Part shown: piece after piece, positions 4,650 through 37,739 of the stretch
Position numbering within the stretch: the first letter of the stretch is position 1
Layout: each line of letters starts with the position of its first letter
Source: Fimbriosthenelais zetlandica
Taxonomy: Eukaryota
Assembly (NCBI GenBank): GCA_977030845.1
Contig: OZ365112.1
Span: 15,128,001 to 15,192,000 of the forward strand
DNA length: 64,000 nt
Direction of reading: 5' to 3'
Program-made: the position numbers and the translations under genes
The notes under the pieces: generated by a model
Databases searched by the model: none
Seen by the model: the letters and a program-made list of their open reading frames with translations, nothing else
Told to the model about the DNA's origin: nothing

Positions 4650-5150
4650 CTATCCATTATACGACTCATTCTTTCTATAAAAATCCCATTCACAGAAGTG
4701 CTTCTGCCCACTGCTGCGCAGAATCCATCCTCTCTCTCTCCAGCCCTCATGCTGGAAAAACCCACTATCCACGACAGCACAAATTTACCATGTCTTCCTG
4801 AACCAGAGGCACAGAATGCGGTGCATGACCAGAACATATATATGGTACCTTTCCCTGGAGCCCATGAAGGCAGCCACTTGTTCTTGAATCGCATGTCTAC
4901 TTTTTCTTCTGTATCGCTGGGAAGTTTTCCGGGCGAACATGGAAATGCCATCCCCCTGGTTTGGCCATGCTTTTTGAAAGGCATTGGCCTGGAGCAGTTG
5001 CGGGTAATTTGGTGGCAGCAACAGCAGAAGCAGAGGGGTGGGTATGTTTAAGGCACCTCCAGCTGTGTGGCTCCAGGTATTGTTTGCATACCATGGAGCA
5101 CGAGTGGACTGAATAAAGAAAGATGGGCAAGGAACAGCCATTATGTATAC
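4650..5150 (+). mobile_element. Decayed RTE-clade LINE, C-terminal RT region
   Basis: Plus frame with stops reads QIYHVFLNQRHRMRCMTR...WEVFRANMEMPSPWFGHAF*KALAWSSCG*FGGSNSRSRG, resembling the RTE motifs EVL.RA..PSI / LRW.GHV.R / G.RSRG. The local GC-rich patch explains the stack of overlapping ORFs. Confidence 0.4.
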
Positions 5151-24402: not shown

Positions 24403-26854
24403 CACCTACTTTATGGTAGACATATTCTGCAGATAGTACCAATTGCACCTCCATATTTTTTAGCCTAATAATTTAGAAGGGCACTTTTTGGTCAAGCCAT
24501 AGATCGATTGAATCCGGAGGATCCTTGGTTGTTGTACATTAGTATAATATGAAAAATGGCCTCTCGATTGATTTCAATGTTGTTAAACTCGAACGATAGA
24601 CCTAAATACTGTGAATGTAAGGACTATTCTCTCCCAATTAAAGGCCATACACTTCTGATATACAATCAACTTTCCTTATACTAGTACGTGCATGAATTTA
24701 AAGTAAATATTATAATGCAGTCTTACCATGAATAAATATTGCAGATTGTCAGCAGTGCCTGAAACACATACACAAAATGAATGTGACATATGATTTAGTA
24801 CAGAGCTTGAAAACCTAATCCTAGTCGCAAAATATCAGGTTGAGCATTTATAGGTGATTGCATGCATAACTAATACAGCTGAAAGGATTTTCTTTTTTCC
24901 TTTGCTTCCACATAAGTGATGATGGGAAAGGATAAGGAGAAAAGATGGAGGGGAAACGGTCCTTCTTGTCTCCTATGTATGCGAGCTCATCCGTAATTAA
25001 TCACTATATAAAAATCCCCCGTGGGCACGCTTAACAGCATTAGACTATAATCCATTATGGTCAGTCACACTCCATGAAAAAAACCACCAGCTATGATCCA
25101 TTAAGTGCTCCCATAAAAGGAACCCAATTTAAGGGAGGGATGCAATTGGAAAAAAGTCACAATATAGGCCTACTGTGGTGCAAATTGCCATGACTCAACA
25201 CTTGGGTTTTGCACCCATTATCTTAATTGACAATTCTTCAACATTTTAAGGAAAAAAAATGGATCATGGAAAATAAAATTCAGAAAACATGGAAAACATT
25301 ATACCCTTAGGCAGGCTAATAGGGATTGTTGAATGTAAAAGTGCTTTAAATATGCCAAAGAAATGAAGCTAATGGACTAGGTTAATGATTAAGGGGCATG
25401 ATAAAGGAAGTGGAACTTGGAAATCAGAGGAACGTTGTTAAAGTACATAATCATTAATTAAGCAATACCTCCTGGCCCTCATGAATACGCCACATATATC
25501 AGCCGAGAATACATTCGCTATCCGTTACTGTTTTCCCTCACTATTTCTATAGGACGGGGGAAAAGTTCTTAGTACGTAGAACAACATTATCTACTAATTT
25601 GTTGGGATTGTTAAATGTGGTCATTAGCTACCAGCAATGGTGGCCATGCGCATTAGAGCTACATGCTGCAACACACTAATCTCTTTCTCGGTGGCAGTAA
25701 TTGGGCATGAATTGTAAATTGGATAACAGCAGAGTCGGCTCAGGCAAACACACATGGCAGAGGCAATTGATTAACGACAGAAAAATATTTTCAGAACAAT
25801 TTGGGGTTTAGAAATAAACATTTCTAGAGTGACACACTTGGACTGGAATACCTTTAGATCTTTTAGCATTCCTAATCTTTGATGTTGACAATTCTACTTC
25901 ATGACCAGGCAGGGCCGTGAGCAGGGTTTCTCATATGGCTGCTTTCGAAAGGGTCGAACGCTGACCGCTGACTATACCTCTGAAGCCCATGTTCTGTATT
26001 GTTATATCAGAATACCTTTAAACGGAAATTAATTTACTCCCCACCCGCGTATTGTTAAGGTTTCCTCCTCCAAGTCCGGCTTGTGTTACAAAGCTGCCTT
26101 CTAGGTCGGTAATTGATATTCGGTCTAAAATAATACAGGTCATCCAAAAATAACATGTGTGCTTTGACCTGCTAACCGAATTTTACCATAACATAGGCAT
26201 AAGAACTATGCATATACTTAAGTTTAATATAATGGATAGATCCCGAATGATCCCGGCTATTTTCTGGCTATGTTTATGGATTGTACTTAGGATTCCTCAG
26301 GGCAGATGGCGGTACTACTTTCTAGTTTTTTTCTGGGTATCATCTCTCACGCATTCAGCCGGGAACATGTCTTTGGGCTTTTGTGACATGAAAGACAACT
26401 TCATGCATGGTATGTGGGTAGGCAGGCAAAAGCAACCCATTTTATGGCGGCCATTTGACTATAGGACATGAATGCAAAATGGACGGTCACTTTTTTCTCT
26501 CAATTTTAAAGGAATATGGCCGTCACCTTATGTCCTTCCCTCTAAACTTACCCAACATGTCGTTATGAGCTTTTCTGCGCTCAGCTGACTGTGATGTAGA
26601 CCTCCTAGGTTCCATTCCCCTACGTTCCTCTGGCGTTACAGATTATCCATAACAGACTGACATAGGACAATTTTGATGGTATGGGGGAAGAATGGGTGTG
26701 GGCTGTGATTCTTACAGCCCATTCTATGGCCAAACTATTGTCACTTAGCAACCACAAATTCTGGCCATAACTCATGATTTATATATATTTAATTTATACA
26801 CGTCTACTTAATGGCATTTCTGTCCTGATTTTCAGCCTGTTTGACCTGTGACTT

Positions 26855-26970
26855 ATGAGTCTGACAATGGAGACCTTGTTTGTCCTTTTGGCAGTACTGA
26901 TAGCAGTATCAGTAGTAGGAATCATGGTCTCAGTCGTGGCTGCCGTCCGTATGTGCATCAATAAGCAAGG
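26855..26970 (+). CDS. Small single-pass membrane protein (66 aa), coding exon 1: MSLTMETLFVLLAVLIAVSVVGIMVSVVAAVRMCINKQ(G)
   Basis: Exon 26836-26970 has acceptor TTTTCAG| and donor AGG|GTAAGT. An in-frame TGA lies just upstream of ATG 26855 (alternative ATG 26867). There is a run of about 24 hydrophobic residues followed by R/K; phase-2 end. Confidence 0.8.
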
Positions 26971-28096
26971 GTAAGTATGGCATGCTAATTACTATACGGT
27001 ATATGGAAGTTTAATATTTAAATATATGGTAAAATATAGCACACAAGTGAACTATTTGCATGGCTTAACTGCCTAGAATGGTCCTGTTTTATAAAGTGCT
27101 AATGCCACCAATATGCCTACTCTGGATACTCAACACCTCTGAATGAGAAGCAATCGAGAAAGTGAGGGGCCTCTATATGTGACCATGCCATGCAATCTAC
27201 AGGACTTTACAATATACAAGTCCTATATATGGCATCTGAACTGAATCAAAAGGACTGGTGAAACGAGGTGCCAAATAGATACCTACTTTGGGACGTGTTG
27301 GCAGATGGGCTCTCCTAGCTTTAAGTCCATATGAATGGAAGCTGGCAAATCTGGATCGCCCAGACAGGACAAGCTTTTAGTTCCCCTGAAGCCGAAACAG
27401 AATATGGCTCCTCACCAAGTGACATTGCCTTTCAGAGCTGTAGGGACGTGTATGATGTCCGATAGGGCTGTCAACAATGAACTGGATTGTCTCATAAAAA
27501 TAGCTAACAGGGGAAGGTTGGAAGGTGGCAAGGACAGTTATAAATACCTTGGCATTCTAAACATAATACGTACTTAACATAATATGTTCATTGCTACACT
27601 CAATCACATAATTGTATCATCAATACATTTCCCCTGTACCTTAGGACCATATACATACTTCCATACTCGCATTAACAGTTCAATGTGTATAAATACACTT
27701 TAAAAGAAAGAAAGATCTTTATGTTACCATGGTAACGATATTGAGACCTATAGAGTATAACACCTGTGACTGAGCTATGGGTTCATTATTTCTATGAGAG
27801 CTCCTCCTGGAATTTTTAACAGTCGATATTATAACGCCCCCTGGGGCAAATGAGCGTAACAGGAGTCTCAGGTTGCCCACATTACCAATGTTTTAACGGC
27901 ACATATTTTCTTCAATCCATGTACTATTGGTCCAATTACAGTACTGAATTTAAGCATGTTCCTTCCACAATCATATTTAAGCAAATGATGTAATTGAATT
28001 GGTTTTACATGGAATCCTACAGCATAACATGAATGAAACATAAGATCATTTAATTATATTCCTTATAATGGAGGTTGTTTTGATTCATTTCCACAG

Positions 28097-28181
28097 GGAG
28101 GAACCGTTTGAACCATTACAAGAGGAGGATTATGACGACTTGGAGGTTCAAATAGAATTGAAGGAGGCAGTGGACGTCTGA
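28097..28181 (+). CDS. Small single-pass membrane protein, coding exon 2: (G)EEPFEPLQEEDYDDLEVQIELKEAVDV*
   Basis: Acceptor TTCATTTCCACAG|; the phase matches the previous exon (GG|G = Gly). Open to TGA 28179-28181, giving a strongly acidic tail; AATAAA at 28956, 29413 and 29988 downstream. Confidence 0.8.
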
Positions 28182-29591
28182 TTTATGATGTACGAAAATG
28201 GTGCTTTAAGGACAGAAACAAAAATGGTGTTCAACTTATTAATAATGACCTTCATGTGGGCAAAGACGTTTGAACACTCCTGTTTGGGTTTCCCATATTG
28301 CATCTCAAGTGCCAGGAAAACTTGATGCAAGTCGGCCAAGGATAACTAGGTCAATGTGAAGATGAAACGATCTTTTCAGGAAAGAATCAAGTCCAGGGGA
28401 GTAAAACACAATCCACTGATCAACAGGGCCATAGAAATTCCGATAAATGAGTCCTCAATATTTTACTGGTTTGTCCTGAATTTAAATCTTTTATCATATC
28501 AATGAAGCAGCTGCAGTGTGGCAGTGGAATAATCTGCACACAATGCTTCCCTTGTGAAGAGATAGATTGGAAAAGTTTTTGTTAATGCTGATTACATGTC
28601 TCTTGATAATAACCAGTGGGGAAAGTAAAGGACTGTTAGTGTTAATCTCGATATTTTCCAAGAGATAAACAAAAAAGGTTAGTGTCTACACATATTTCAA
28701 ACAGATGTTTCTGCAAAAGGTGCACATTTTGGTATTTCATATCAAGCACCCACCGGAACTCATTGGTAGCAAGAGAATGTTATGGAGACAGGGACATTTT
28801 CTCCAGGAATATGTCGTGTGATGGCCTCAGACAAAACGCCTTGTCGTGCATGCTTATGTGAACACCAAATGGAACCTTTTACTGCAAACCAGCTTATGTA
28901 GGCAATAATTTTGTGATGTTGGCAATATGAGTTACACAGTATGCCATAAATCATGAATAAACTTCATTTAAGGGGTGTCTTAGTTGAGACGGGATTGCCT
29001 CCATTTACAAAACGCTGTCAATGATGACCCATCACTGGACGAGGCAACAGGAATTAAGACACCCCAAATACTAACTAGGCTTTTACCATTTATCCTTTTT
29101 AAACCAAAGGCCAATAATATTTGGTTTGTTGCCTTCGTCAATGTATAACGATACTGATGGCCTTCTTATGCTGTCTGATGGTAAAACTCTTGAAAGTATT
29201 GAAGGAAGAAGGACAATGTCAAAAACCTGTATTGTACCGGTTATGCAGAAGAAAAGTTAATTTAATCAGTATTGTATTTTTTCTTCAAAAGATTCTGCCA
29301 GCGATCCGAATGTAAATCATGTATACCCCGCCACTGTTATGCGCCTCATCAATTGATAAGCCAGTTATTATTTGTGTTGTGCACCCTACGGCAACAAATG
29401 ACAATTTTATATAATAAAATATGACAGATCCAATCTCCCACCTGTTTCTACCTCTTACGTGGCACCATAGAACATGCAGATAATTAATAGATTCACTGTA
29501 ACCCTTATGCAAACATGTATTCTTGGATTTTAGTCAATGAATTCAAGGACGAATTCAAGGCAAGAACAATTCCTTTTTGACATAAAACATT

Positions 29592-29597: not shown

Positions 29598-31604
29598 GAC
29601 ATTTATATCGTACAGATAAAAACCACATACAAACCTAACTGGACAAATATATGTGACAACTGTCATGCATGCATCTTTAAAACGATTGAGAAATATTCTG
29701 GTAGAAGCAAATTAGGTTATTCAATGAATGGTTTCATTGACGTTTTTCATTCAGAATTTGATTATCAATGTTTAGTCTGATCAGTAGACCTCATTGTTTA
29801 GAAGGTGCGGAGTTATTTGAAACATTGCTGATCTGAAAGTTGCTTATTCAAGATTATGCAAACGCTATGGGAAAGACATTCATCAACGTTCTGCTGTTGA
29901 AAGGAATGAGATACATGACCTATCCATAGTGCTGTGTAAGTTTGACGGGCCTTATTTGACACTCGTTTGACCTGACATTAGAAAACAAATAAATCCGCCT
30001 GGAAAATCTCTTTCCATCCACAGATCCATTTGATGTAGATCAATTTGGCACATGTGGTGCATCTTGAAACGGAAATGAGCACTCACCGAATAGGTGAGAA
30101 GAAGATAATTGACTATGGAGGCAGGACCAAGGATTTGGTCAATGACAACGTACTCTTGAAATTTGCGTTTATTATTCAAGTGTGGAGTAGAATAGCTTCA
30201 TCTTCACACTTCCAATGTTATTAAGACCATATTATTTTTGGGAGACCAAATAACAAGCTGCATCACTATAATCTGACTTTAGAGTTCATCCCTAATAAAA
30301 TAACACTTCTTGCATACAAATAAACTGTACAGTTTTGACTATGTCCTCCCAAGCAAATGAGGATTATTTAACATCTCCTATACTCAGATATATACAATGC
30401 ATCAATATAATTACACGTGCCTTCTATTGTGTTTTAAAAAGTATACTATTCAGCACACTTCTCTGAATGTTACAAATGCGTTTCAGGATGAATGTTCATT
30501 GCAGAAGGGCTCTTTAAATTAACTAATGGCAGCATAAATACACATTTTCCAAAGGAATATTCATAAATTATCTCAGACTATGTGCACATGACAGTTCATT
30601 TTAACAACGGATATGTTATCACCGTACACATCCATGTTCGCAATCAATAATACCAATAGTAATAATAGTAACTACTTGTTTCATTCTTCAAAATCTCGGA
30701 AGTCTTCAAGCTCAGTATCAATACACCATGGGGATATTATCCATTACTAATGATATGTACCAATAAGGTACAATAATTAATGTTTATAAATTCTCCTGAA
30801 CACTGTAATAAATCAATATTATCTTCTTGGCAATCCTAGAAAAGACCCAACAATGACAATGCACAAGACACGCGAGGTTTGGAACAAAACAAGATCTAGG
30901 ACTGCTAAACTGCTAGCACACAGTTTGCGATCAAAGATGAAATGACAAAATGTTGGACCATTCAAAGCAGTACCATTTTGATCTGCCCATTTATACGATA
31001 CATCAGTGGAGTATCTTATCGGACACGATAATTATAGTCGCCTTGTGACATTGATTTCATTGAAGATTTTTCAGAAGAACTATGTCATTCTTACCTAGTG
31101 ATAATCAGAAACATGACATACTATACCTTTTTCATGAAATCTCAATGTTGTGAAAAAACATTTCCAATACCAGTCATAATAACTCTCTCATGATGACCTT
31201 TCAATAATTTTGACAATGAACAGCTATACATATTGGTACAATGTATAAACTTGTCGTATGTGGATTCATTATATTTCCTTTGCCTGGGACCTGCCCACAT
31301 TCTGCTATCATGTATATCTGTTAAAGAGTTGGATATAATACAAGTAAAATAGGGGGTTTAAAAGAAAACAGGCCTTTTACACAAGCTTCTGATAATGATT
31401 TTGAATTAGCAACTAAGAAGCAAATTCGCATCCAAATCAAAAATGCATTCCACTTGGGCGTTGGAAAACAAATATGAAAATATTTCTTTCTCTTGCCATT
31501 CATAACAGAGATTCCCTTGTACATAATATTGCAAGTCTTTGCAAGAAAAACTCTTACAATGTGAGAGAGCCTAATGAAATAGCACCTATATTGTTGAATA
31601 TGTG

Positions 31605-31755
31605 TTATGTTAGCTTGTCTAGAGCACGTGTAAATTTTAGAGTTGAGACAAAGTCCAGTTTTAACTCATTTTTAACTGTATTGTAAAAGGTCTCTGGAGC
31701 TCGCGTTTGCATCTTCCTGATTTCAATCAATAACTCTCCATTAACATGGCCAAAC
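31605..31755 (-). CDS. ARM-TIR-SAM protein, last exon (C-terminal half of SAM-like domain): (K)FGHVNGELLIEIRKMQTRAPETFYNTVKNELKLDFVSTLKFTRALDKLT*
   Basis: Acceptor TTTAATTCCAG|; phase 2 matches the previous exon (AA|G). Open to TAA 31607-31605; has the G..L...APE.FY...K..L...LKF..AL pattern typical of this family's C-terminus. Confidence 0.9.
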
Positions 31756-31927
31756 CTGGAATTAAACATAAAGCAAATTATCGTGAGAAAAACCCCTCAT
31801 ACAGGAGAAAGAGCTTACTCCGTTTGTTATAATAATTATGTCCTACACTAAATACATTTATTCTGGTTCAAAAGCATTGTTGAAAACAACCCAATAGGAA
31901 ACAAAGAAGAGTCTGAGTAGCACATAC

Positions 31928-32069
31928 TTTTCTTGCAATGATCCTAAATCATTTTCTTGTAACCATTTAGCGACGTCTTCAACGTTCCATGAACTGATGC
32001 GCATAGTGGCATCCACATGTATTGCTGTGTTTATAGAGCTTAAACTGGGAGCTGCTACCAACCGCATAC
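31928..32069 (-). CDS. ARM-TIR-SAM protein, SAM-like exon: (G)MRLVAAPSLSSINTAIHVDATMRISSWNVEDVAKWLQENDLGSLQE
   Basis: Acceptor TTTCCTTTTAG| and donor AA|GTATGT; W..EDV..WL....L is the SAM signature; phase 1 to phase 2. Confidence 0.9.
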
Positions 32070-32839
32070 CTAAAAGGAAAATGAACAGCTATAATAGCAG
32101 ATCATAATGACTCCTAAGAGTTCTGCAATTGATCACTGTTGAAGACTAAATGGCGGTGGGTAGGGAATGCAGTTGTCAATAAATGATACTTAAAGATAAT
32201 AATGTGGAGAAAGAGAATACCCATCCTCTGACTCTTGGTAGATGCTAAATATACATGTACTTCGGAAAGGGTACCAATGCAAAATGATACCGGTATCGGT
32301 GTCCAATTATAGTTGCATTCTGGCAAGGACTGACATTTTATAGACTTAAGACCTTCAAGAGTCATGTGGCAAACAGAGCTAAAGGCAATCACTAAAGTTG
32401 TCCTTTTTAGATAACAGCTAATATTATGTACGTTAATTTTGTAAATTGCAAATTTTTAATAACAGATATTGTTTGTCAACCATCATTGATTGACGCTAGT
32501 GTATACGGAAGAGCTGACAATTTTTGATACACTTCCCTCCAGCAACAAAATTAATATTGATCTTTGTCTCAGAGCTTTTGTTCAGAATAGCATCGCCAAC
32601 CAAGGTAAAAATTACTCTAACGCTGTCATTAGTTAGCCCCAGCCTTTCAACTGGCTTTACCGCGACAATTAAACATCATTCGCCGACAGACATCACTCTT
32701 CGTTTTCGCCATGAATAAAACCATCTTGTATTGCAAAACTACAGCAGGTTTTCTTACATTTGTCATGGAGACAATTAGCATCGCTAACAGCACCGATGGG
32801 CTGACATTTCAGAGTTGTAATTAAAGCCAGACAAAAAGT

Positions 32840-32950
32840 AATCCCTGCCCGTCAGGCGGAAGTGACTGCGGTAGTTTGGAAGTGGTTAAGCTGGGATGAT
32901 TCCTGCGCGCTCTGCGGCTTTTCTTGCGTTAGCCCAGCAATGTATCTATG
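32840..32950. promoter_or_regulatory. Intronic CpG-rich promoter-like element
   Basis: GGCGGAAGTG (ETS/GABP-type) at 32855-32864 in a CpG-rich patch (about 32590-32960) inside the 3.2-kb TIR-SAM intron; minus-strand donor AAT|GTAAGA at 32758/32757. Confidence 0.35.
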
Positions 32951-34024
32951 GTAATGGACACGTAGCTGGATGAACACAGGCTGTGACGTGTTCATTTTAT
33001 TACCCCGATTACAATAGAGTCAGGAGAGAGAGACTGATAGATAACTTTTTGTGTGAACAAAGCAAGTTTTACTTGATGTTTTACTTGAAGGAAAAATCTA
33101 ACACAGTTGTAAGTGTTATGTATAGAGGCTTATAGAGTTTTCACTTCATGCAGGATTCTATAGATTCTGATATACATTTTGTACATTCATTCCCGATCTT
33201 CAAGGAGTACAGGAAAGAAAACATTTCCTGTATTCCTTTTCATAGACACCAAGGTACCAAGAGTTGCTATCAAGTAGCAAGATACTGAAAAGAACCATCC
33301 TTTATACCTAGAGTTTAAATATCTCTATGAGAAGACAATACCGGTAGAAAATATTATAGAGATCGACTTTACATTATGACATAAGCTCGTAAAAGGAAGA
33401 GATAACGATAGAAATAATAAGATGGATAAAAAATAGGTTAAAAACTTAAATCTAGAAACGCAAGGCAAATGAGTAAACTGATCATGCTCACTCCTTCTCG
33501 GAAATCACCCAAAATTTTTTAACAGTGGTGGGAGGTGATTTCATGAGACAGGGAAACCAACGTTACAGACATTGCTGTGTGCACTCACCTGTTGGGGATT
33601 GTTGGTGTTACGTGCAAGTCCTTACACAAAACAACTAACTAGTAAATATTACACTCTATACAGTTCTTGTTATGGTTCTGTTAAGTAATTTTGGGCTCTT
33701 ATCCATAAATCTAGGAGAAAGCACAAGGGTGAAAGGTCCATTGGGATGAACTCCCATACATTAAGTTCCAAATATTCAACACATCTATAACATTGAGCTC
33801 AATAATTTGTTTTAAAAACTCGAAATAGTGACTTTTGTCTACAATTTATGATTAGATTCCAAAACAAATTTCAAATATATCATAATGGATGACATAATTA
33901 TAATGTGGATATTTGTCACCCTTGGCTTTGTAACTGTCTAGAAGGAAGTTGTTAATGTTGTTAGACTGACTTTACCGGTACCTTTTTGATTATAAATCTC
34001 CATGGGAACCGTGGTGCTGTTCAG

Positions 34025-34159
34025 TGACGTCATACTTGGGGAGGAGAGATACCTCATTGCTAGATAACACAGAGACAACAGGAGATATCGTTACCATGGC
34101 AACTTGGGTTTGTCACCAGGCCTTAGGTCAGACGGCAACATGCCGTTGCCAACGGTAAC
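34025..34159. promoter_or_regulatory. CRE plus clustered RFX X-box-like motifs
   Basis: TGACGTCA 34025-34032, ATTGCTAGATAAC 34056-34068, GTTACCATGGCAAC 34090-34103 and GTTGCCAACGGTAAC 34145-34159. Confidence 0.45.
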
Positions 34160-35312
34160 AATTCAACATGGGGAAAACAATGGAACGATGCGCAACTACT
34201 TCAGGTTTAAAGAATCTAAAATATTAATCTAAAACTAAACTAAATCTTAAATTACTGTACGTAAATCAAATAGGGATAAACAAAAGAAAGAACCTAAACT
34301 TGCAATCTCTAACAAAATTACAAGTTATAATGGAAATTATAAAAAGAAAGATTTACAAAATTCAATCTCAAGTAGTACAATTATGTTATATTGTTGCATT
34401 AAGGCTTGAAAGGATATCTTTCAAAGGTGATCAAATAATAATGCGGGTTTTTATTAAACCAATTCACAATAAGAAAATCAACAAAATTTGAAAAGGATGA
34501 AAAAAAAAAGTTTCTAAATTGTTTTAATTGTAAACACAGGTAAAATTATGGTTAGTGGTCTCACTCTGTTCAATTGACATGCAAACATAGGGCAGTCAGC
34601 TAGATTTCAAATCACTCAAGGTTTTTCTATCCTAATGTGGTTAATAAAAGAACATAACATACGAAATAGTAGATGAAACAGATAGCAAAGATCCTCAGAC
34701 AAATTCCATATAAAATAGTTCCCATAAATGATAACTGTCAGTGGTCAATGTCGACAATGGTAATCAGTCTAAATAATTATAAATTTCATATTCATAAATG
34801 TCATGAAGCTCGACTAAAAAAAGAAATCAGGGAGGTGGGGTTGAGGGTAATCACTGGTTCAATTCATTTTAAATATTCCGTGAAGATCAATTCTAGTACC
34901 CGAAGGTCTTAAGTTGGGTTGGGCGTCCACTCAAAAAGCTATGCAAAGGGAAAGAGGCAATGACAACAAATGGGAAAGGATGTGCCAAAAGCGAAATTGG
35001 GTACAAACACCTGAGGAAGGGATACAACATTCCACCACCAGGTCTAACAGAACAGTAGGCCAAATCCTGCAGGTTCCAGTGAACACAAAACTTCCCACAG
35101 CCAAAAACAAAACCCAGCCAAATCACCACAACAAAATGTAAAAATATACAAGTTTCCACATTCCGACCACAACGAGATGGGAAATAAAATAACATAATGC
35201 ATCATCATTATCATCACCAAAATGCATCCATCTTCTAAACTATAAACCGGAAACTAAACCATCTTCCACCAGAGGAAGGTTTTGATGAGGATCTGCAGAT
35301 GGCTGCACCTAC

Positions 35313-35531
35313 CTTCAATGGAACTGCAGTCTGATGCTGGGCCGCGGACGCGACCTCTGGAGTTAAGTTCCCGTATCAAATTTGGCATCATGTTGTCAAT
35401 GTTGTCTTCACTTGTGAAATCAAAGGCGAGTTTGGAACCAACTAGTCTGCCTAGCCAGCCATCTGGATGATACCGGGGCTGTAGCTTCAGTGGGATTATC
35501 GCTTTCTTTAATCTGGTCGCATATTCAGATT
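35313..35531 (-). CDS. ARM-TIR-SAM protein, TIR exon 3: (E)SEYATRLKKAIIPLKLQPRYHPDGWLGRLVGSKLAFDFTSEDNIDNMMPNLIRELNSRGRVRGPASDCSSIE
   Basis: Acceptor TTTTCTATAATACAG| and donor AAG|GTAGGT; 219 nt, phase 1-1; IIPL.LQ..Y.PDGWLG and F-DF motifs of TIR_2-type domains. Confidence 0.92.
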
Positions 35532-35689
35532 CTGTATTATAGAAAAGAAAATCATAAGTCACATTATGATATCAATATCACTAAATCAGATCAACGTTCA
35601 CCATAACACCTCAGCGAACTCAAAGTTGTAATAACATCCCATTCTTTCTGCAGAGTATGTAAAAGAGTTTATATGCATGTCTCACTTAC

Positions 35690-35791
35690 CTGTTCTACAG
35701 ATGGGACTGTCTTTGTATTTTTGAGATAAACAAACAAGAAGTACTGCTGCTCTTTCTACAGCTAGTGACATTGCCTCAAGGCTGGGCAAAG
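35690..35791 (-). CDS. ARM-TIR-SAM protein, TIR exon 2: (A)LPSLEAMSLAVERAAVLLVCLSQKYKDSPICRT
   Basis: Acceptor TTGCTTGTTTTCAG| and donor CAG|GTAAGT; 102 nt, phase 1-1; LEAM..AVE.A.V..VC.S.KYK.SP.CR motif. Confidence 0.92.
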
Positions 35792-36288
35792 CTGAAAACA
35801 AGCAAAACTCCACATAATATGAACGCCCAATAGGATGAAAGAAGAGTGAATGAGTAAGCCAAGGGAGGCTGTGTAATTTTAGGTTCCCTATACTGAGGAG
35901 ACTTTTAGATCCAACACTCAGCCTGAGCGCCAGCTGATATTTGGCCAGCTTCCCATCTCTGACGTAAAACAAAATGTGATAGATAATCCAGAGAAAACGT
36001 GTATAACATGCAAGAGAACACTCTCAAAATATTAACAAAAAGTCATTTTATTTATTTTGACAATAAGGACTGTTTGAACATGACTTTTTACCAAATTATT
36101 AGGACGCAGAAGCGTAGGAAAGGAGGGCATGGACAGAACCCTGTCTCCTTCCCTCCCCACCGACCCATCTTGTCACCTTCCCTCACACCCACCTGTACTT
36201 ATGCAGCCCACCCATTTGGGAGGTCGAGGCTATGGGTATCATTTATATGTTTTATATTCTTTTTTACCCCAACATATACATGACTCAC

Positions 36289-36441
36289 CTATATTGTCTG
36301 TGTCCATCCAGACCTTGTAGCCGGCAGTACGGAGCCGGTCTCTGACCTTGGACATGACGAGACGTGTTGACCACTGGTAACTAATCATGACATGAGGTAA
36401 GTATGACGCTCCTACGTCACCGTTAACCCCGCGACTCCCAC
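36289..36441 (-). CDS. ARM-TIR-SAM protein, TIR exon 1: (G)GSRGVNGDVGASYLPHVMISYQWSTRLVMSKVRDRLRTAGYKVWMDTDNI
   Basis: Acceptor TGTTGGTTCTCAG| and donor TAG|GTGAGT; 153 nt, phase 1-1; HVMISY.W and GY.VWMD are TIR box 1 and beta-B motifs. Confidence 0.92.
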
Positions 36442-36603
36442 CTGAGAACCAACAGATAAAATGCCCATCAAAATTTAGCCTTACATAAAATATAATCAAT
36501 TTCTTGATTGATATACATTAAGATTGTCCTCAGTTGATGGAAAATGGGAGACCTGTACAATTGACGAATTTCTAGGACATTCAGATTCAGTTTTTTAACT
36601 CAC

Positions 36604-36858
36604 CAGGTATAGGTGATCCAGGTGGCTCCCTAAGTTCTTTATTTACTTGACTGATGGGATCCTTCCCGTGATCCTTGGCATTCTCCCTCCCGGCATTCTT
36701 AACGTGATCATTCCCATGATCCTTTACTTCCCCCCTGTTCTCTTTAACAGCCGGGTCTCTACCACAGCTGCTCGTCCGTTGTTGTATTACCCATAATGCT
36801 CCCTTGGCTGTCCTCCTCGTTTCTTCCCGAGAACCGTTTTGTTCCAAATCTTCTAAAG
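36604..36858 (-). CDS. ARM-TIR-SAM protein, last ARM helix plus charged linker: (A)LEDLEQNGSREETRRTAKGALWVIQQRTSSCGRDPAVKENRGEVKDHGNDHVKNAGRENAKDHGKDPISQVNKELREPPGSPIP
   Basis: Acceptor TTTCCTTCACAG| and donor CTG|GTGAGT; 255 nt, phase 1-1; A.GALW.I ARM motif. Confidence 0.88.
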
Positions 36859-37387
36859 CTGTGAAGGAAAGAAAATGGATTGTTCTAAGAAAGCTCATCA
36901 ACCTATTCTGACTGCCATCTTACAATTCTAGTAAAAAAGAACGAAAGATAACAAGGTCTACCAATACTTTTAGCATATTACACATGCAGGTTCCAGATGA
37001 TTTCGGAATGTTCAACACTAGAGCTGTCAGGATATCAGCTTCTGGCATATGTATACCGAGTGATCTGATGGAATATTAAGCTTTTTCCTAACAATAGTGA
37101 CGTATATCATGACATAAACGTGGCAGCTGGCATCAGTTGCCAGGGCAACCCTTGGTGTTTTTTGCTTTCATAGGTCACTCAACTACTTGATATTGTGGTG
37201 CTTTGGATGTTAGTTTCCAATGGTTGTTGTACATATACACGGGTATTAATAATTATGGCCAAACTTTAAATGCCTGGGTAGGAAATCCAGTGGAAAGTTA
37301 GAGAAAACATGTATGTACGAAAGATACACTTTCAGGGAAGAACATGCTTTTTCTGCGCCATAGGTGTACGTTTGGATTTAGACCTAC

Positions 37388-37582
37388 CTTTTATACAGCC
37401 TTTCTCTGCAAGGATGATTTGCCGGTTCGATCCACTAAAGGCAAAAACCCACAATCCCTGACAGGCCAGTATTTGTTCCTCTTCACTAGCGTTTCCTGAG
37501 AGTAATTTCGTGTAGACAGGCACCACACCCTTCTGTACGATACGTTCCTTGTTTGATTCGAAAGCTCCGAGACGATTCAACC
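37388..37582 (-). CDS. ARM-TIR-SAM protein, ARM-repeat exon: (G)LNRLGAFESNKERIVQKGVVPVYTKLLSGNASEEEQILACQGLWVFAFSGSNRQIILAEKGCIK
   Basis: Acceptor TTTACGTCTTTCAG| and donor AAG|GTAGGT; 195 nt, phase 1-1; N+..I...G..P.L..LL......EEQ..A...LW..AF is an armadillo repeat pattern. Confidence 0.9.
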
Positions 37583-37739
37583 CTGAAAGACGTAAAGCAA
37601 TCAGAAAATACTATTATGATCTAGTTTTTTTTATATCTTATGCAAGACATAATTAATATTTATTCTATGAGAAAATAACAACATGAACTTTTGTAAAAAA
37701 AAAAAAACAAAAAAACATGTGGTCCTCTAGACTACGTAC

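What the first reader, a model, noticed from the sequence alone, without database searches (positions are those of the whole stretch)
26836..28181. Unannotated 66-aa membrane microprotein resembling a minimal transmembrane signalling adaptor
Seen: two exons invisible to the ORF track splice in phase to give MSLTMETLFVLLAVLIAVSVVGIMVSVVAAVRMCINKQGEEPFEPLQEEDYDDLEVQIELKEAVDV. This has almost no ectodomain, one TM helix, a juxtamembrane Cys and a very acidic tail with a single Tyr in EEDYDDL. Established: LAT/PAG-type adaptors share a short ectodomain, TM, palmitoylated Cys and Tyr motifs; acid-flanked Tyr is preferred by Syk/Src-family kinases; YxxL is also an AP-2 sorting motif. Inference: a lineage-specific adaptor or trafficking microprotein. 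I do not recognise a named family.
Basis: partly seen in the sequence, partly recalled or inferred. Interest (0 to 1): 0.7.

Follow-up and report, generated by a model that had tools for sequence, protein, structure and literature searches.

The report
Conserved unannotated single-pass membrane microprotein

Summary
Observation confirmed. ATG 26855 (or 26867), donor AGG|GTAAGT after 26970, acceptor CAG| before 28097 and stop 28179-81 give the stated 66-aa protein.

A two-exon ORF like this is not above chance on its own: the window holds about 36 comparable ones. Conservation decides the case.
- A 1.1-kb metagenome contig (L004) carries both exons with the same phase-2 split and a 207-nt intron.
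- A third, GC-rich contig (L005) carries exon 1.
- Four further ORF fragments carry exon 2, and their similarity to the window begins exactly at the acceptor.
- Between species only the exons align. Synonymous sites are saturated (pS 0.78-0.86) while pN is 0.10-0.14 (Fisher p 1e-10 to 1e-15).

The conserved start is the second ATG (26867), which gives 62 aa. In all three species an in-frame stop lies between an upstream acceptor and that ATG, so these are not the last exons of a longer receptor.

The helix and the RMCI motif are 25-27/31 identical. The tail keeps [ED]EPFEPL, ED[YF]DD, VQ[IM]EL and a terminal V/I. Tyr is Phe in one homologue, and the Leu of YxxL is Pro in four of six, so the phosphotyrosine/YxxL adaptor reading is not supported.

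No Pfam, PDB or annotated protein match was found, and no RNA run was listed. Most likely this is a helix-packing accessory membrane subunit with an acidic docking tail; that mechanism is inferred, not shown.

The parts
26836..26866 (+). 5' leader part of coding exon 1. It follows a strong acceptor (ttctgtcctgattttcag|) and holds an in-frame TGA at 26849-51 and a first, weak-context ATG at 26855. It is not conserved in relatives.
   Evidence: The blastn alignment to L004 starts only at 26867.
26867..26970 (+). Conserved coding part of exon 1, from the conserved ATG (acaATGg) through the helix and RMCINKQ to the first two bases of the split Gly codon. The donor AGG|GTAAGT follows.
   Evidence: Against L004 and L005, pS is 0.78-0.81 and pN 0.10.
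26876..26947 (+). Transmembrane helix (L4-V27 of the 62-aa form). It has an invariant small-residue face: S15, G18, S22, A25, A26.
   Evidence: Hydropathy of 2.1-2.95 over 19-residue windows. Identity to homologues is 25-27/31, and the few variable positions lie on one helix face, roughly opposite the small-residue face.
26948..26959 (+). Invariant juxtamembrane R-M-C-I. Cys30 (26954-56) is a candidate S-acylation site. The Arg gives the positive-inside signal.
   Evidence: Invariant in the window, L004 and L005. Acylation is inferred only.
26971..28096 (+). Phase-2 intron of 1126 nt (GTAAGT ... ttccacag).
   Evidence: The same phase is seen in L004 (207-nt intron, AG|GTATAT ... ttttcag|A) and at the L005 donor (AA|GTGAGT). 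The intron sequence does not align between species.
28097..28181 (+). Coding exon 2: the last base of the Gly codon, the 27-aa acidic tail and the TGA stop.
   Evidence: Homologous ORF fragments P0001-P0005 become similar exactly at this acceptor. Tail pN is 0.13-0.18 with synonymous sites saturated (pS at least 0.76).
28098..28118 (+). [ED]EPFEPL, the invariant core motif of the tail.
   Evidence: EPFEPL is invariant in all six sequences.
28125..28139 (+). E-D-[YF]-D-D acidic-aromatic motif. Tyr47 is at 28131-33. It is followed by Leu here but by Pro in four of six homologues.
28146..28160 (+). Conserved V-Q-[IM]-E-L block. The tail then diverges in sequence and length but always ends in V or I.

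Best explanation
This is a real, single-copy protein-coding gene for a 62-aa membrane microprotein (66 aa if the first ATG is used). It has two coding exons and probably an untranslated exon upstream.

Topology: the N-terminus has only 2-3 residues before a 24-residue, strongly hydrophobic helix. Arg and Lys follow the helix. The chain should therefore insert N-out/C-in (type III signal anchor) in the secretory pathway or plasma membrane, leaving a 35-residue, net -9 tail in the cytosol.

Proposed mechanism (inferred): the nearly invariant helix packs against another membrane helix through its small-residue face (S15/G18/S22/A25/A26). The partner could be a separate protein or further copies of itself. 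The invariant Cys next to the membrane may be acylated. The acidic tail, through [ED]EPFEPL and ED[YF]DD, docks on a basic surface of that partner or of a cytosolic protein. In other words, it would work as an accessory or regulatory subunit in the manner of FXYD, the regulins or EMRE, not as a phosphotyrosine adaptor.

Shown: gene structure, conservation, purifying selection, hydrophobicity and charge pattern, and non-conservation of Tyr and YxxL. Inferred: topology, acylation, helix packing and tail docking.
For: Gene structure.

Conservation: both exons, the phase-2 split and the stop are conserved in L004. Exon 1 is conserved in L005. Exon 2 is conserved in P0001-P0005.

Selection: only the exons align between the window and L003/L004. 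Synonymous sites are saturated while pN is 0.10-0.18. For window versus L004 over 52 codons, pS is 0.86, pN is 0.14 and Fisher p is 1.7e-15. All three exon-1 pairs give p of 1e-9 to 1e-11, although GC3 ranges from 0.48 to 0.94.

ORF closed upstream: an in-frame stop lies between an upstream acceptor and the conserved ATG in all three species.

Helix: it is 25-27/31 identical. The only variable helix positions (6, 10, 17, 20; V/I/L/M swaps) cluster on one face (resultant 0.87, p about 0.03). That face lies about 147 degrees from the invariant S15/G18/S22/A25/A26 face.

Tail: net charge is -11 to -12 in all homologues (one search lists the motifs, another the charges).

Copy number: single copy in the 447-Mb genome.
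Against: There is no expression evidence. No RNA or DNA run was listed for this stretch, so splicing, the 5' exon and translation are unobserved here. No partner is known. The dimer prediction for the helix gave no verdict. Exon 2 was not found within 5 kb downstream of exon 1 in L005. None of the named short motifs I tested is conserved family-wide, so what the tail binds is unknown. The helix-face statistic rests on three sequences and four variable positions. The hydrophobic stretch could in principle be a cleaved signal peptide.
Confidence: 0.55

Rival explanations
1. Sorting or trafficking microprotein. The acidic tail carries export or endocytic signals (DxE, YxxL, a C-terminal valine, an acidic cluster). 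The protein would itself be a trafficked regulator, or would steer a partner between ER, Golgi, endosome and plasma membrane.
For: The terminal residue is V or I in all five distinct tails. A Phi-x-Phi C-terminus is present in four of five. DxE is present in four of five. The window has YDDL.
Against: YxxPhi is present only in the window and P0002. DxE sits at the same place only in the three close relatives. [DE]xxxL[LI] occurs only in L004. This reading does not explain why the membrane helix is the most conserved part. The motif definitions used here, apart from LIR and FFAT, are from memory.
Confidence: 0.2
2. One reading: a minimal LAT/PAG-type transmembrane adaptor. Its acid-flanked Tyr would be phosphorylated by Src/Syk-type kinases and would dock SH2 proteins.
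For: The architecture fits: tiny ectodomain, one helix, juxtamembrane Cys, and an acid-flanked Tyr in five of six sequences.
Against: Tyr is Phe in L004/P0005. The +3 Leu is Pro in four of six. There is only one Tyr. The tail is otherwise conserved around these changes, which shows that an aromatic residue, not a phosphorylatable one, is what is kept. There is no sequence relation to any adaptor family.
Confidence: 0.07
3. Secreted peptide precursor. The hydrophobic stretch would be a cleaved signal peptide, and the acidic 35-residue piece with one Cys would be released.
For: The hydrophobic segment is N-terminal. There are small residues (VAAV) near its end.
Against: The hydrophobic stretch is about 24 residues long, which is long for a signal-peptide core. 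The n-region has no positive charge, while Arg and Lys follow the stretch, which favours N-out insertion. The segment is the best conserved part of the protein (25-27/31 with saturated synonymous sites), unlike typical signal peptides. No dibasic processing sites are present.
Confidence: 0.07
4. Last exons of a longer receptor gene, joined to upstream coding exons.
For: A strong acceptor lies just upstream of the ATG in the window, L004 and L005, so an upstream exon probably exists.
Against: In the helix frame a stop lies between that acceptor and the conserved ATG in all three species. In the window all three frames are closed. Similarity between species begins exactly at the ATG. The exhaustive exon-2 profile search found no longer protein carrying this tail.
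Confidence: 0.03
5. Not a gene: a chance ORF over conserved non-coding DNA.
For: Two-exon ORFs of this size are common by chance in the window. No RNA evidence exists.
Against: Differences are concentrated at synonymous sites (p 1e-10 to 1e-15). Frame, phase and stop are kept across genomes with GC3 from 0.48 to 0.94. The 6-nt indel at the exon-1 end is in frame.
Confidence: 0.01

Closest known systems
Transmembrane adaptor proteins of vertebrate leukocytes (LAT, PAG1/Cbp, NTAL, LIME, LST1). This comparison is from general knowledge.
   Same: Very short ectodomain, one membrane helix, a juxtamembrane Cys, an unstructured cytosolic tail and no enzymatic domain.
   Different: Those proteins work through several conserved tyrosines. 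Here there is one Tyr, which is replaced by Phe in one homologue, and its YxxL context is lost in most. The tail is only 35 residues. There is no sequence similarity. Here the helix, not the tail, is the most conserved part.
Single-helix accessory or regulatory subunits: FXYD proteins, phospholamban/sarcolipin-type regulins, KCNE, EMRE/SMDT1. This comparison is from general knowledge.
   Same: Tiny single-pass proteins whose membrane helix is the functional, strongly conserved element and packs against a transporter or channel. EMRE also ends in a poly-acidic tail that contacts a basic partner surface. Small-xxx-small helix faces are typical.
   Different: There is no sequence relation and no Pfam hit. 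Topology and length differ: regulins are C-terminal tail-anchored, EMRE has a mitochondrial presequence, and FXYD has an ectodomain motif and a basic tail. No partner is known here.
Stannin and Drosophila Hemotin, small N-out single-pass proteins of endosomal membranes. This comparison is from memory.
   Same: About 88-aa type III proteins with a short N-terminus, a helix, juxtamembrane Cys and a cytosolic tail. They are smORF-type genes that are easily missed in annotation.
   Different: No hit to the Pfam stannin families was listed at E up to 10 for four family members. Stannin has a CWC motif and a structured cytosolic helix, not an acidic EPFEPL/ED[YF]DD tail.
ECSCR (Pfam PF15820), the only database hit.
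   Same: A weak match over the helix and juxtamembrane region (E 0.0063, 16.8 bits).
   Different: The score is below the curated cut-off of 27 bits. The match is not reproduced by L004, L005, P0001 or P0003, which give other weak helix-only hits or none. This is compositional similarity of hydrophobic helices.

Membership tests
LAT/PAG-type transmembrane adaptor proteins | Short ectodomain and a single transmembrane helix | tested here: met
   There are 3 residues (7 from the first ATG) before a 24-residue hydrophobic helix.
LAT/PAG-type transmembrane adaptor proteins | Juxtamembrane palmitoylated Cys (usually CxxC) | tested here: inconclusive
   One Cys in RMCI is invariant in 3 of 3 species. 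There is no CxxC. Acylation itself is not testable with these tools.
LAT/PAG-type transmembrane adaptor proteins | Conserved tyrosine motifs that dock SH2 proteins after phosphorylation | tested here: not met
   The single Tyr is Phe in L004/P0005. YxxL is kept in only 2 of 6 sequences.
LAT/PAG-type transmembrane adaptor proteins | Sequence relation to a described adaptor family | tested here: not met
   There is no Pfam hit above cut-off. No annotated protein was found among 5.8 billion clusters or 1.84 billion representatives.
ECSCR (PF15820) | Score at or above the Pfam gathering cut-off, reproduced in homologues | tested here: not met
   The score is 16.8 bits against a cut-off of 27, and the hit is absent for the four homologues scanned.
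FFAT-like VAP-binding motif | [quoted passage not shown] | tested here: not met
   [YF]DD[LP]xV fails at positions 3, 5 and 7, which is about 2.5 suboptimal elements. The paper reports that this level inhibits targeting.
LC3-interacting region (LIR/AIM) | xLIR or cLIR regular expression (PMC5119064), conserved across the family | tested here: not met
   EDYDDL matches in the window and P0002 only. Pro replaces the final Leu elsewhere. The invariant EPFEPL fails at position 2.
Type III (N-out/C-in) signal-anchor membrane protein (topological class) | Long N-terminal hydrophobic segment, no positive n-region, positive residues after the helix | tested here: met
   The mean Kyte-Doolittle value reaches 2.95. 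The N-flank is M-E-T, M-Q-S or M-Q-P. R28 is invariant and K33 or R32-33 follows. The actual topology has not been measured.
Stannin / MAP17-SMIM24 / other Pfam small-membrane-protein families | Match to the family profile | tested here: not met
   None of these families was listed at E up to 10 for the window protein, L004, L005 exon 1, P0001 or P0003. HMMER filters drop most hits above about 0.1.

The most novel reading that the evidence does not exclude
A previously unrecognised, deeply conserved invertebrate accessory subunit. Its near-invariant 24-residue helix would dock through its S/G/S/A face onto a specific transporter, channel or receptor. Its acidic EPFEPL/ED[YF]DD tail would gate or localise that partner. 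This would be a new family analogous to FXYD, regulins or EMRE, missed by all annotation because it is 62 aa and split by an intron.
Probability: 0.25. Interest if true: 0.7.

Novelty: new variant of a known kind. Interest (0 to 1): 0.45.

Why it matters
The finding gives a concrete, selection-validated example of a spliced microprotein gene that ORF-based and standard annotation both miss. No protein carrying either exon is annotated in collections of 5.8 billion clusters and 1.84 billion representatives.

Its conservation pattern is unusual. The membrane helix is almost frozen while synonymous sites are saturated. That pattern is the signature of helix-mediated regulatory subunits, several of which (regulins, FXYD, EMRE) turned out to control major ion pumps and channels.

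The report supplies the gene model, the conserved start, the residues to mutate and the homologous loci needed to test this. It also removes a tempting but wrong label, that of a phosphotyrosine adaptor.

Tried and rejected
RNA evidence: the look-up of sequencing runs was called with kind rna on 28097-29000 and with kind any on 26700-29200, the latter after three busy errors. No run was listed in either case, so read laying could not be used.

Contig DNA for P0001, P0002 and P0004 could not be fetched because the sample files were too large.

Collection scans:
- The first JGI metagenome scan, with the window protein, found nothing. The second, with alignment A3, gave L005 only.
- The prokaryote genome-contig scan found nothing.
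- The search for homologous proteins with the full protein, the two-species profile and the exon-1 profile found no annotated protein and no exon-1 ORFs.

Other searches:
- ESM Atlas with exon 1 gave only scores of 0.83 or lower to unnamed clusters.
- A PDB profile search gave nothing below E 0.6.
- Full-text searches for the peptide motifs, JAAUXT and the sample names found nothing relevant.

Complex prediction with two copies of the helix gave no verdict (score 0.13 against a mark of 0.32). This is neither support nor evidence against self-association.

Motif readings considered and rejected as family-wide features: FFAT-like, LIR, YxxPhi, [DE]xxxL[LI], the TRAF2 and TRAF6 motifs, and a PxIxIT-like motif.

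The ECSCR and DUF5453 Pfam hits were rejected as helix noise.

Pfam scans of 10 long ORFs upstream in the window and 10 in L005 found nothing. No host gene or synteny was identified.

Structure prediction was not run. The spliced protein has no window reference, and a helix plus a disordered tail would add little.
Full report
THE OBSERVATION

- An acceptor (ctgattttcag|) precedes 26836.
- An in-frame TGA lies at 26849-51.
- ATGs lie at 26855 (cttATGa, weak context) and 26867 (acaATGg, strong context).
- A consensus donor AGG|GTAAGT follows 26970.
- A 1126-nt intron ends in ttccacag| before 28097.
- The join is phase 2 (GG|G, Gly) and the frame closes at TGA 28179-81.

The spliced product is the 66-aa sequence given in the finding. 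All three frames carry a stop between 26836 and 26855.

On its own this ORF is not remarkable. A crude scan for strong donors (GTRAGT) and pyrimidine-rich acceptors found 15 two-exon ORFs of at least 60 aa on the + strand and 21 on the - strand of the same window. The case therefore rests on conservation.

CONSERVATION

A word-indexed search of 5.8 billion protein clusters with the 66-aa protein returned two ORF fragments from ENA metagenome assemblies, P0001 and P0002. An exhaustive HMMER search of 1.84 billion representatives with an exon-2 profile added P0003, P0004 and P0005.

All five are prokaryote-style ORF calls that run from intron sequence into exon 2. In each, similarity to the window begins exactly at the predicted acceptor. 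The window reads ...HFHR|EEPFEPL. The others read ...VLSR|EEPFEPL...LFFS|EEPFEPL...MCFR|EEPFEPL and ...FIFR|DEPFEPL.

DNA could be fetched for two of the five.
- L003 (1545 bp) has exon 2 only, 79 nt from the contig end.
- L004 (1136 bp) has the whole coding region: ATG at 417, donor AG|GTATAT after 514, a 207-nt intron, acceptor ttttcag| before 722 and a stop at 825-827. This gives a 67-aa protein with the same phase-2 split.

A second JGI metagenome scan with the two-species alignment found L005 (JAAUXT010115559.1). This GC-rich contig carries exon 1, MQPLFVLLAILIAVSVVGILVSVVAAVRMCINK, followed by the donor AA|GTGAGT, again phase 2. Exon 2 was not found in the 5 kb held downstream.

SELECTION

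Sensitive blastn between the window (26000-29500) and L004 aligns only 26867-26958 (73% identity) and 28053-28156 (69%). Against L003 it aligns only 28094-28139. Introns, leaders and 3' flanks do not align.

Nei-Gojobori counts are as follows.
- Window versus L004, 52 codons: 30.5 of 35.7 synonymous sites differ (pS 0.86), against 16.5 of 120.3 non-synonymous sites (pN 0.14). Fisher p is 1.7e-15.
- The three exon-1 pairs: pS 0.78-0.86, pN 0.10-0.13, p from 6e-10 to 1e-11. GC3 is 0.55 in the window, 0.48 in L004 and 0.94 in L005.
- Tail pairs: pN 0.10-0.18, with synonymous sites saturated (pS at least 0.76).

The length difference at the exon-1 end (INKQG versus IRR) is 6 nt, so it is in frame. 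This is strong purifying selection on the protein in both exons, across lineages old enough to have saturated silent sites. The gene is real.

START CODON AND THE LONGER-RECEPTOR RIVAL

The nucleotide and protein alignments begin at the second ATG: window 26867, L004 417 and L005 5001.

In all three species a pyrimidine-rich acceptor lies 31-121 nt upstream of that ATG, and an in-frame stop lies between the acceptor and the ATG. The stops are TGA 26849 in the window, TGA 387 in L004 and TGA 4890 in L005.

The conserved product is therefore 62 aa in this genome, or 66 aa if the weak first ATG is also used. A non-coding upstream exon is likely, and the ORF cannot be the end of a longer receptor. 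The exhaustive exon-2 profile search, which has no length filter, found no longer protein carrying this tail.

ANATOMY (62-aa numbering)

- Residues 1-3 are M-[EQ]-[TSP].
- Residues 4-27 form a strongly hydrophobic helix, with a mean Kyte-Doolittle value up to 2.95.
- Residues 28-31 are R-M-C-I, invariant in three of three species.
- The tail has 12 acidic and 3 basic residues.

Exon-1 identity between species is 25-27 of 31. Within the helix only positions 6, 10, 17 and 20 vary, and only among V, I, L and M. On a helical wheel they fall at 200-280 degrees (resultant 0.87). About 2.6% of random four-position sets cluster this tightly. The invariant small residues S15, G18, S22, A25 and A26 fall at 340-80 degrees, roughly the opposite face. 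This is based on three sequences and is suggestive only.

The tail keeps [ED]EPFEPL (EPFEPL is invariant in six of six), [ED]ED[YF]DD, VQ[IM]EL and a C-terminal V or I. Its last 6-13 residues diverge in sequence and length.

WHAT THE TAIL IS NOT

The Leu of YDDL is Pro in P0001, P0003, P0004 and P0005.

Regular-expression tests gave these results.
- The published xLIR and cLIR patterns (PMC5119064) match EDYDDL in the window and P0002 only. The invariant EPFEPL fails at position 2.
- The published FFAT-like search pattern (PMC3261905) matches nowhere. [YF]DD[LP]xV has about 2.5 suboptimal elements, a level that paper reports as inhibiting ER targeting.
- YxxPhi, [DE]xxxL[LI], the TRAF2 and TRAF6 motifs and a PxIxIT-like pattern are each present in only some members. 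These definitions are from memory.

Only the terminal V or I is universal, and Phi-x-Phi at the C-terminus occurs in four of five tails. The family's own conserved motifs match no named motif that I could test.

DATABASE STATUS

Pfam gives only sub-threshold helix matches, and they differ from homologue to homologue: ECSCR (E 0.0063, 16.8 bits against a cut-off of 27) and DUF5453 for the window, DUF2516 for L004, and COX14 for L005.

The PDB profile search gave nothing below E 0.6. The ESM Atlas gave nothing at 0.9 or above. No annotated protein was found in any protein search, and no paper holds the motifs.

The gene is single copy in its 447-Mb, 79-contig assembly, at C13:15154855-15156181.

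Earlier notes of this scan call the genome a probable annelid. I could not check that. The hosts of the metagenome contigs are also unknown, so I make no claim on taxonomic range beyond at least four mutually silent-site-saturated lineages: the window group, L003/P0004, L004 and L005.

MECHANISM

Shown: the architecture and what is conserved.

Inferred:
- N-out/C-in insertion. The hydrophobic segment is long, the n-region has no positive charge, and Arg and Lys follow the helix.
- Possible S-acylation of Cys30.
- A helix that packs against another helix through its small-residue face.
- An acidic tail that docks on a basic surface.

This is how FXYD proteins, regulins, KCNE and EMRE work (general knowledge), but there is no sequence relation to any of them. 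A dimer prediction for the helix gave no verdict and counts neither way.

Rivals, with my odds:
- a trafficking-signal carrier, 0.2;
- the phosphotyrosine adaptor, 0.07;
- a cleaved signal peptide releasing an acidic peptide, 0.07;
- part of a longer gene, 0.03;
- not a gene, 0.01.

LIMITS

There is no RNA evidence. No run was listed, which does not mean that none exists. The full-length family rests on two complete and five partial sequences. Contig DNA for three homologues could not be read.

VERDICT

The gene is real and under strong purifying selection. It belongs to no described family. The adaptor interpretation is only partly right. Function is inferred from architecture alone.

Noticed in passing
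window 31600-37610, minus strand: A multi-exon TIR-domain gene lies convergent to the microprotein gene. The open frame at 36242-36517 (-) hits Pfam TIR_2 (E 4.7e-6). Neighbouring minus-strand open frames read like ARM-type (37335-37610) and SAM-type (31861-32088) exons but gave no Pfam hit as single exons. This is the scan's separate finding s1-207685.
   Followed up: partly
window 26443-26456: A palindromic ATGGCGGCCAT element lies about 400 nt upstream of coding exon 1. It is a candidate core-promoter or YY1-type motif that could mark the start of the presumed non-coding first exon. There are GT donors between it and 26836, for example ATG|GTATGG near 26679.
   Followed up: no
L003 224-226 versus P0004: P0003/L003 ends ...GNAV at a TGA stop. 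P0004, from another assembly, is identical up to that point but reads Trp there (TGA to TGG implied) and runs on for 48 unrelated residues. This could be a polymorphism, a sequencing error or a lost stop in one lineage.
   Followed up: no
L005 4880-4945; L004 412-417: There are upstream ORFs in the leaders of homologues. L005 has out-of-frame ATGs at 4880 and 4889 opening a roughly 21-codon uORF that ends at TAG 4943. L004 has a one-codon ATG-TGA uORF overlapping the main ATG (ATGTGATG). The window instead has an in-frame weak ATG 12 nt upstream. This may point to translational control of a tiny ORF.
   Followed up: partly
contigs of P0001 (ERZ26222911, 78 kb and 62 kb): The same 53-aa exon-2 ORF sits on two long contigs of one sample, with partly different neighbouring gene calls and an RVT_1 reverse-transcriptase ORF about 7 kb upstream. 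These may be two haplotypes or a recent duplication in that host.
   Followed up: no
window 1-26000, both strands: Ten of the longest open frames between 4.6 and 26.5 kb gave no Pfam hit at E up to 0.01. No host or upstream gene for the microprotein exons was identified, and the region looks gene-poor.
   Followed up: partly
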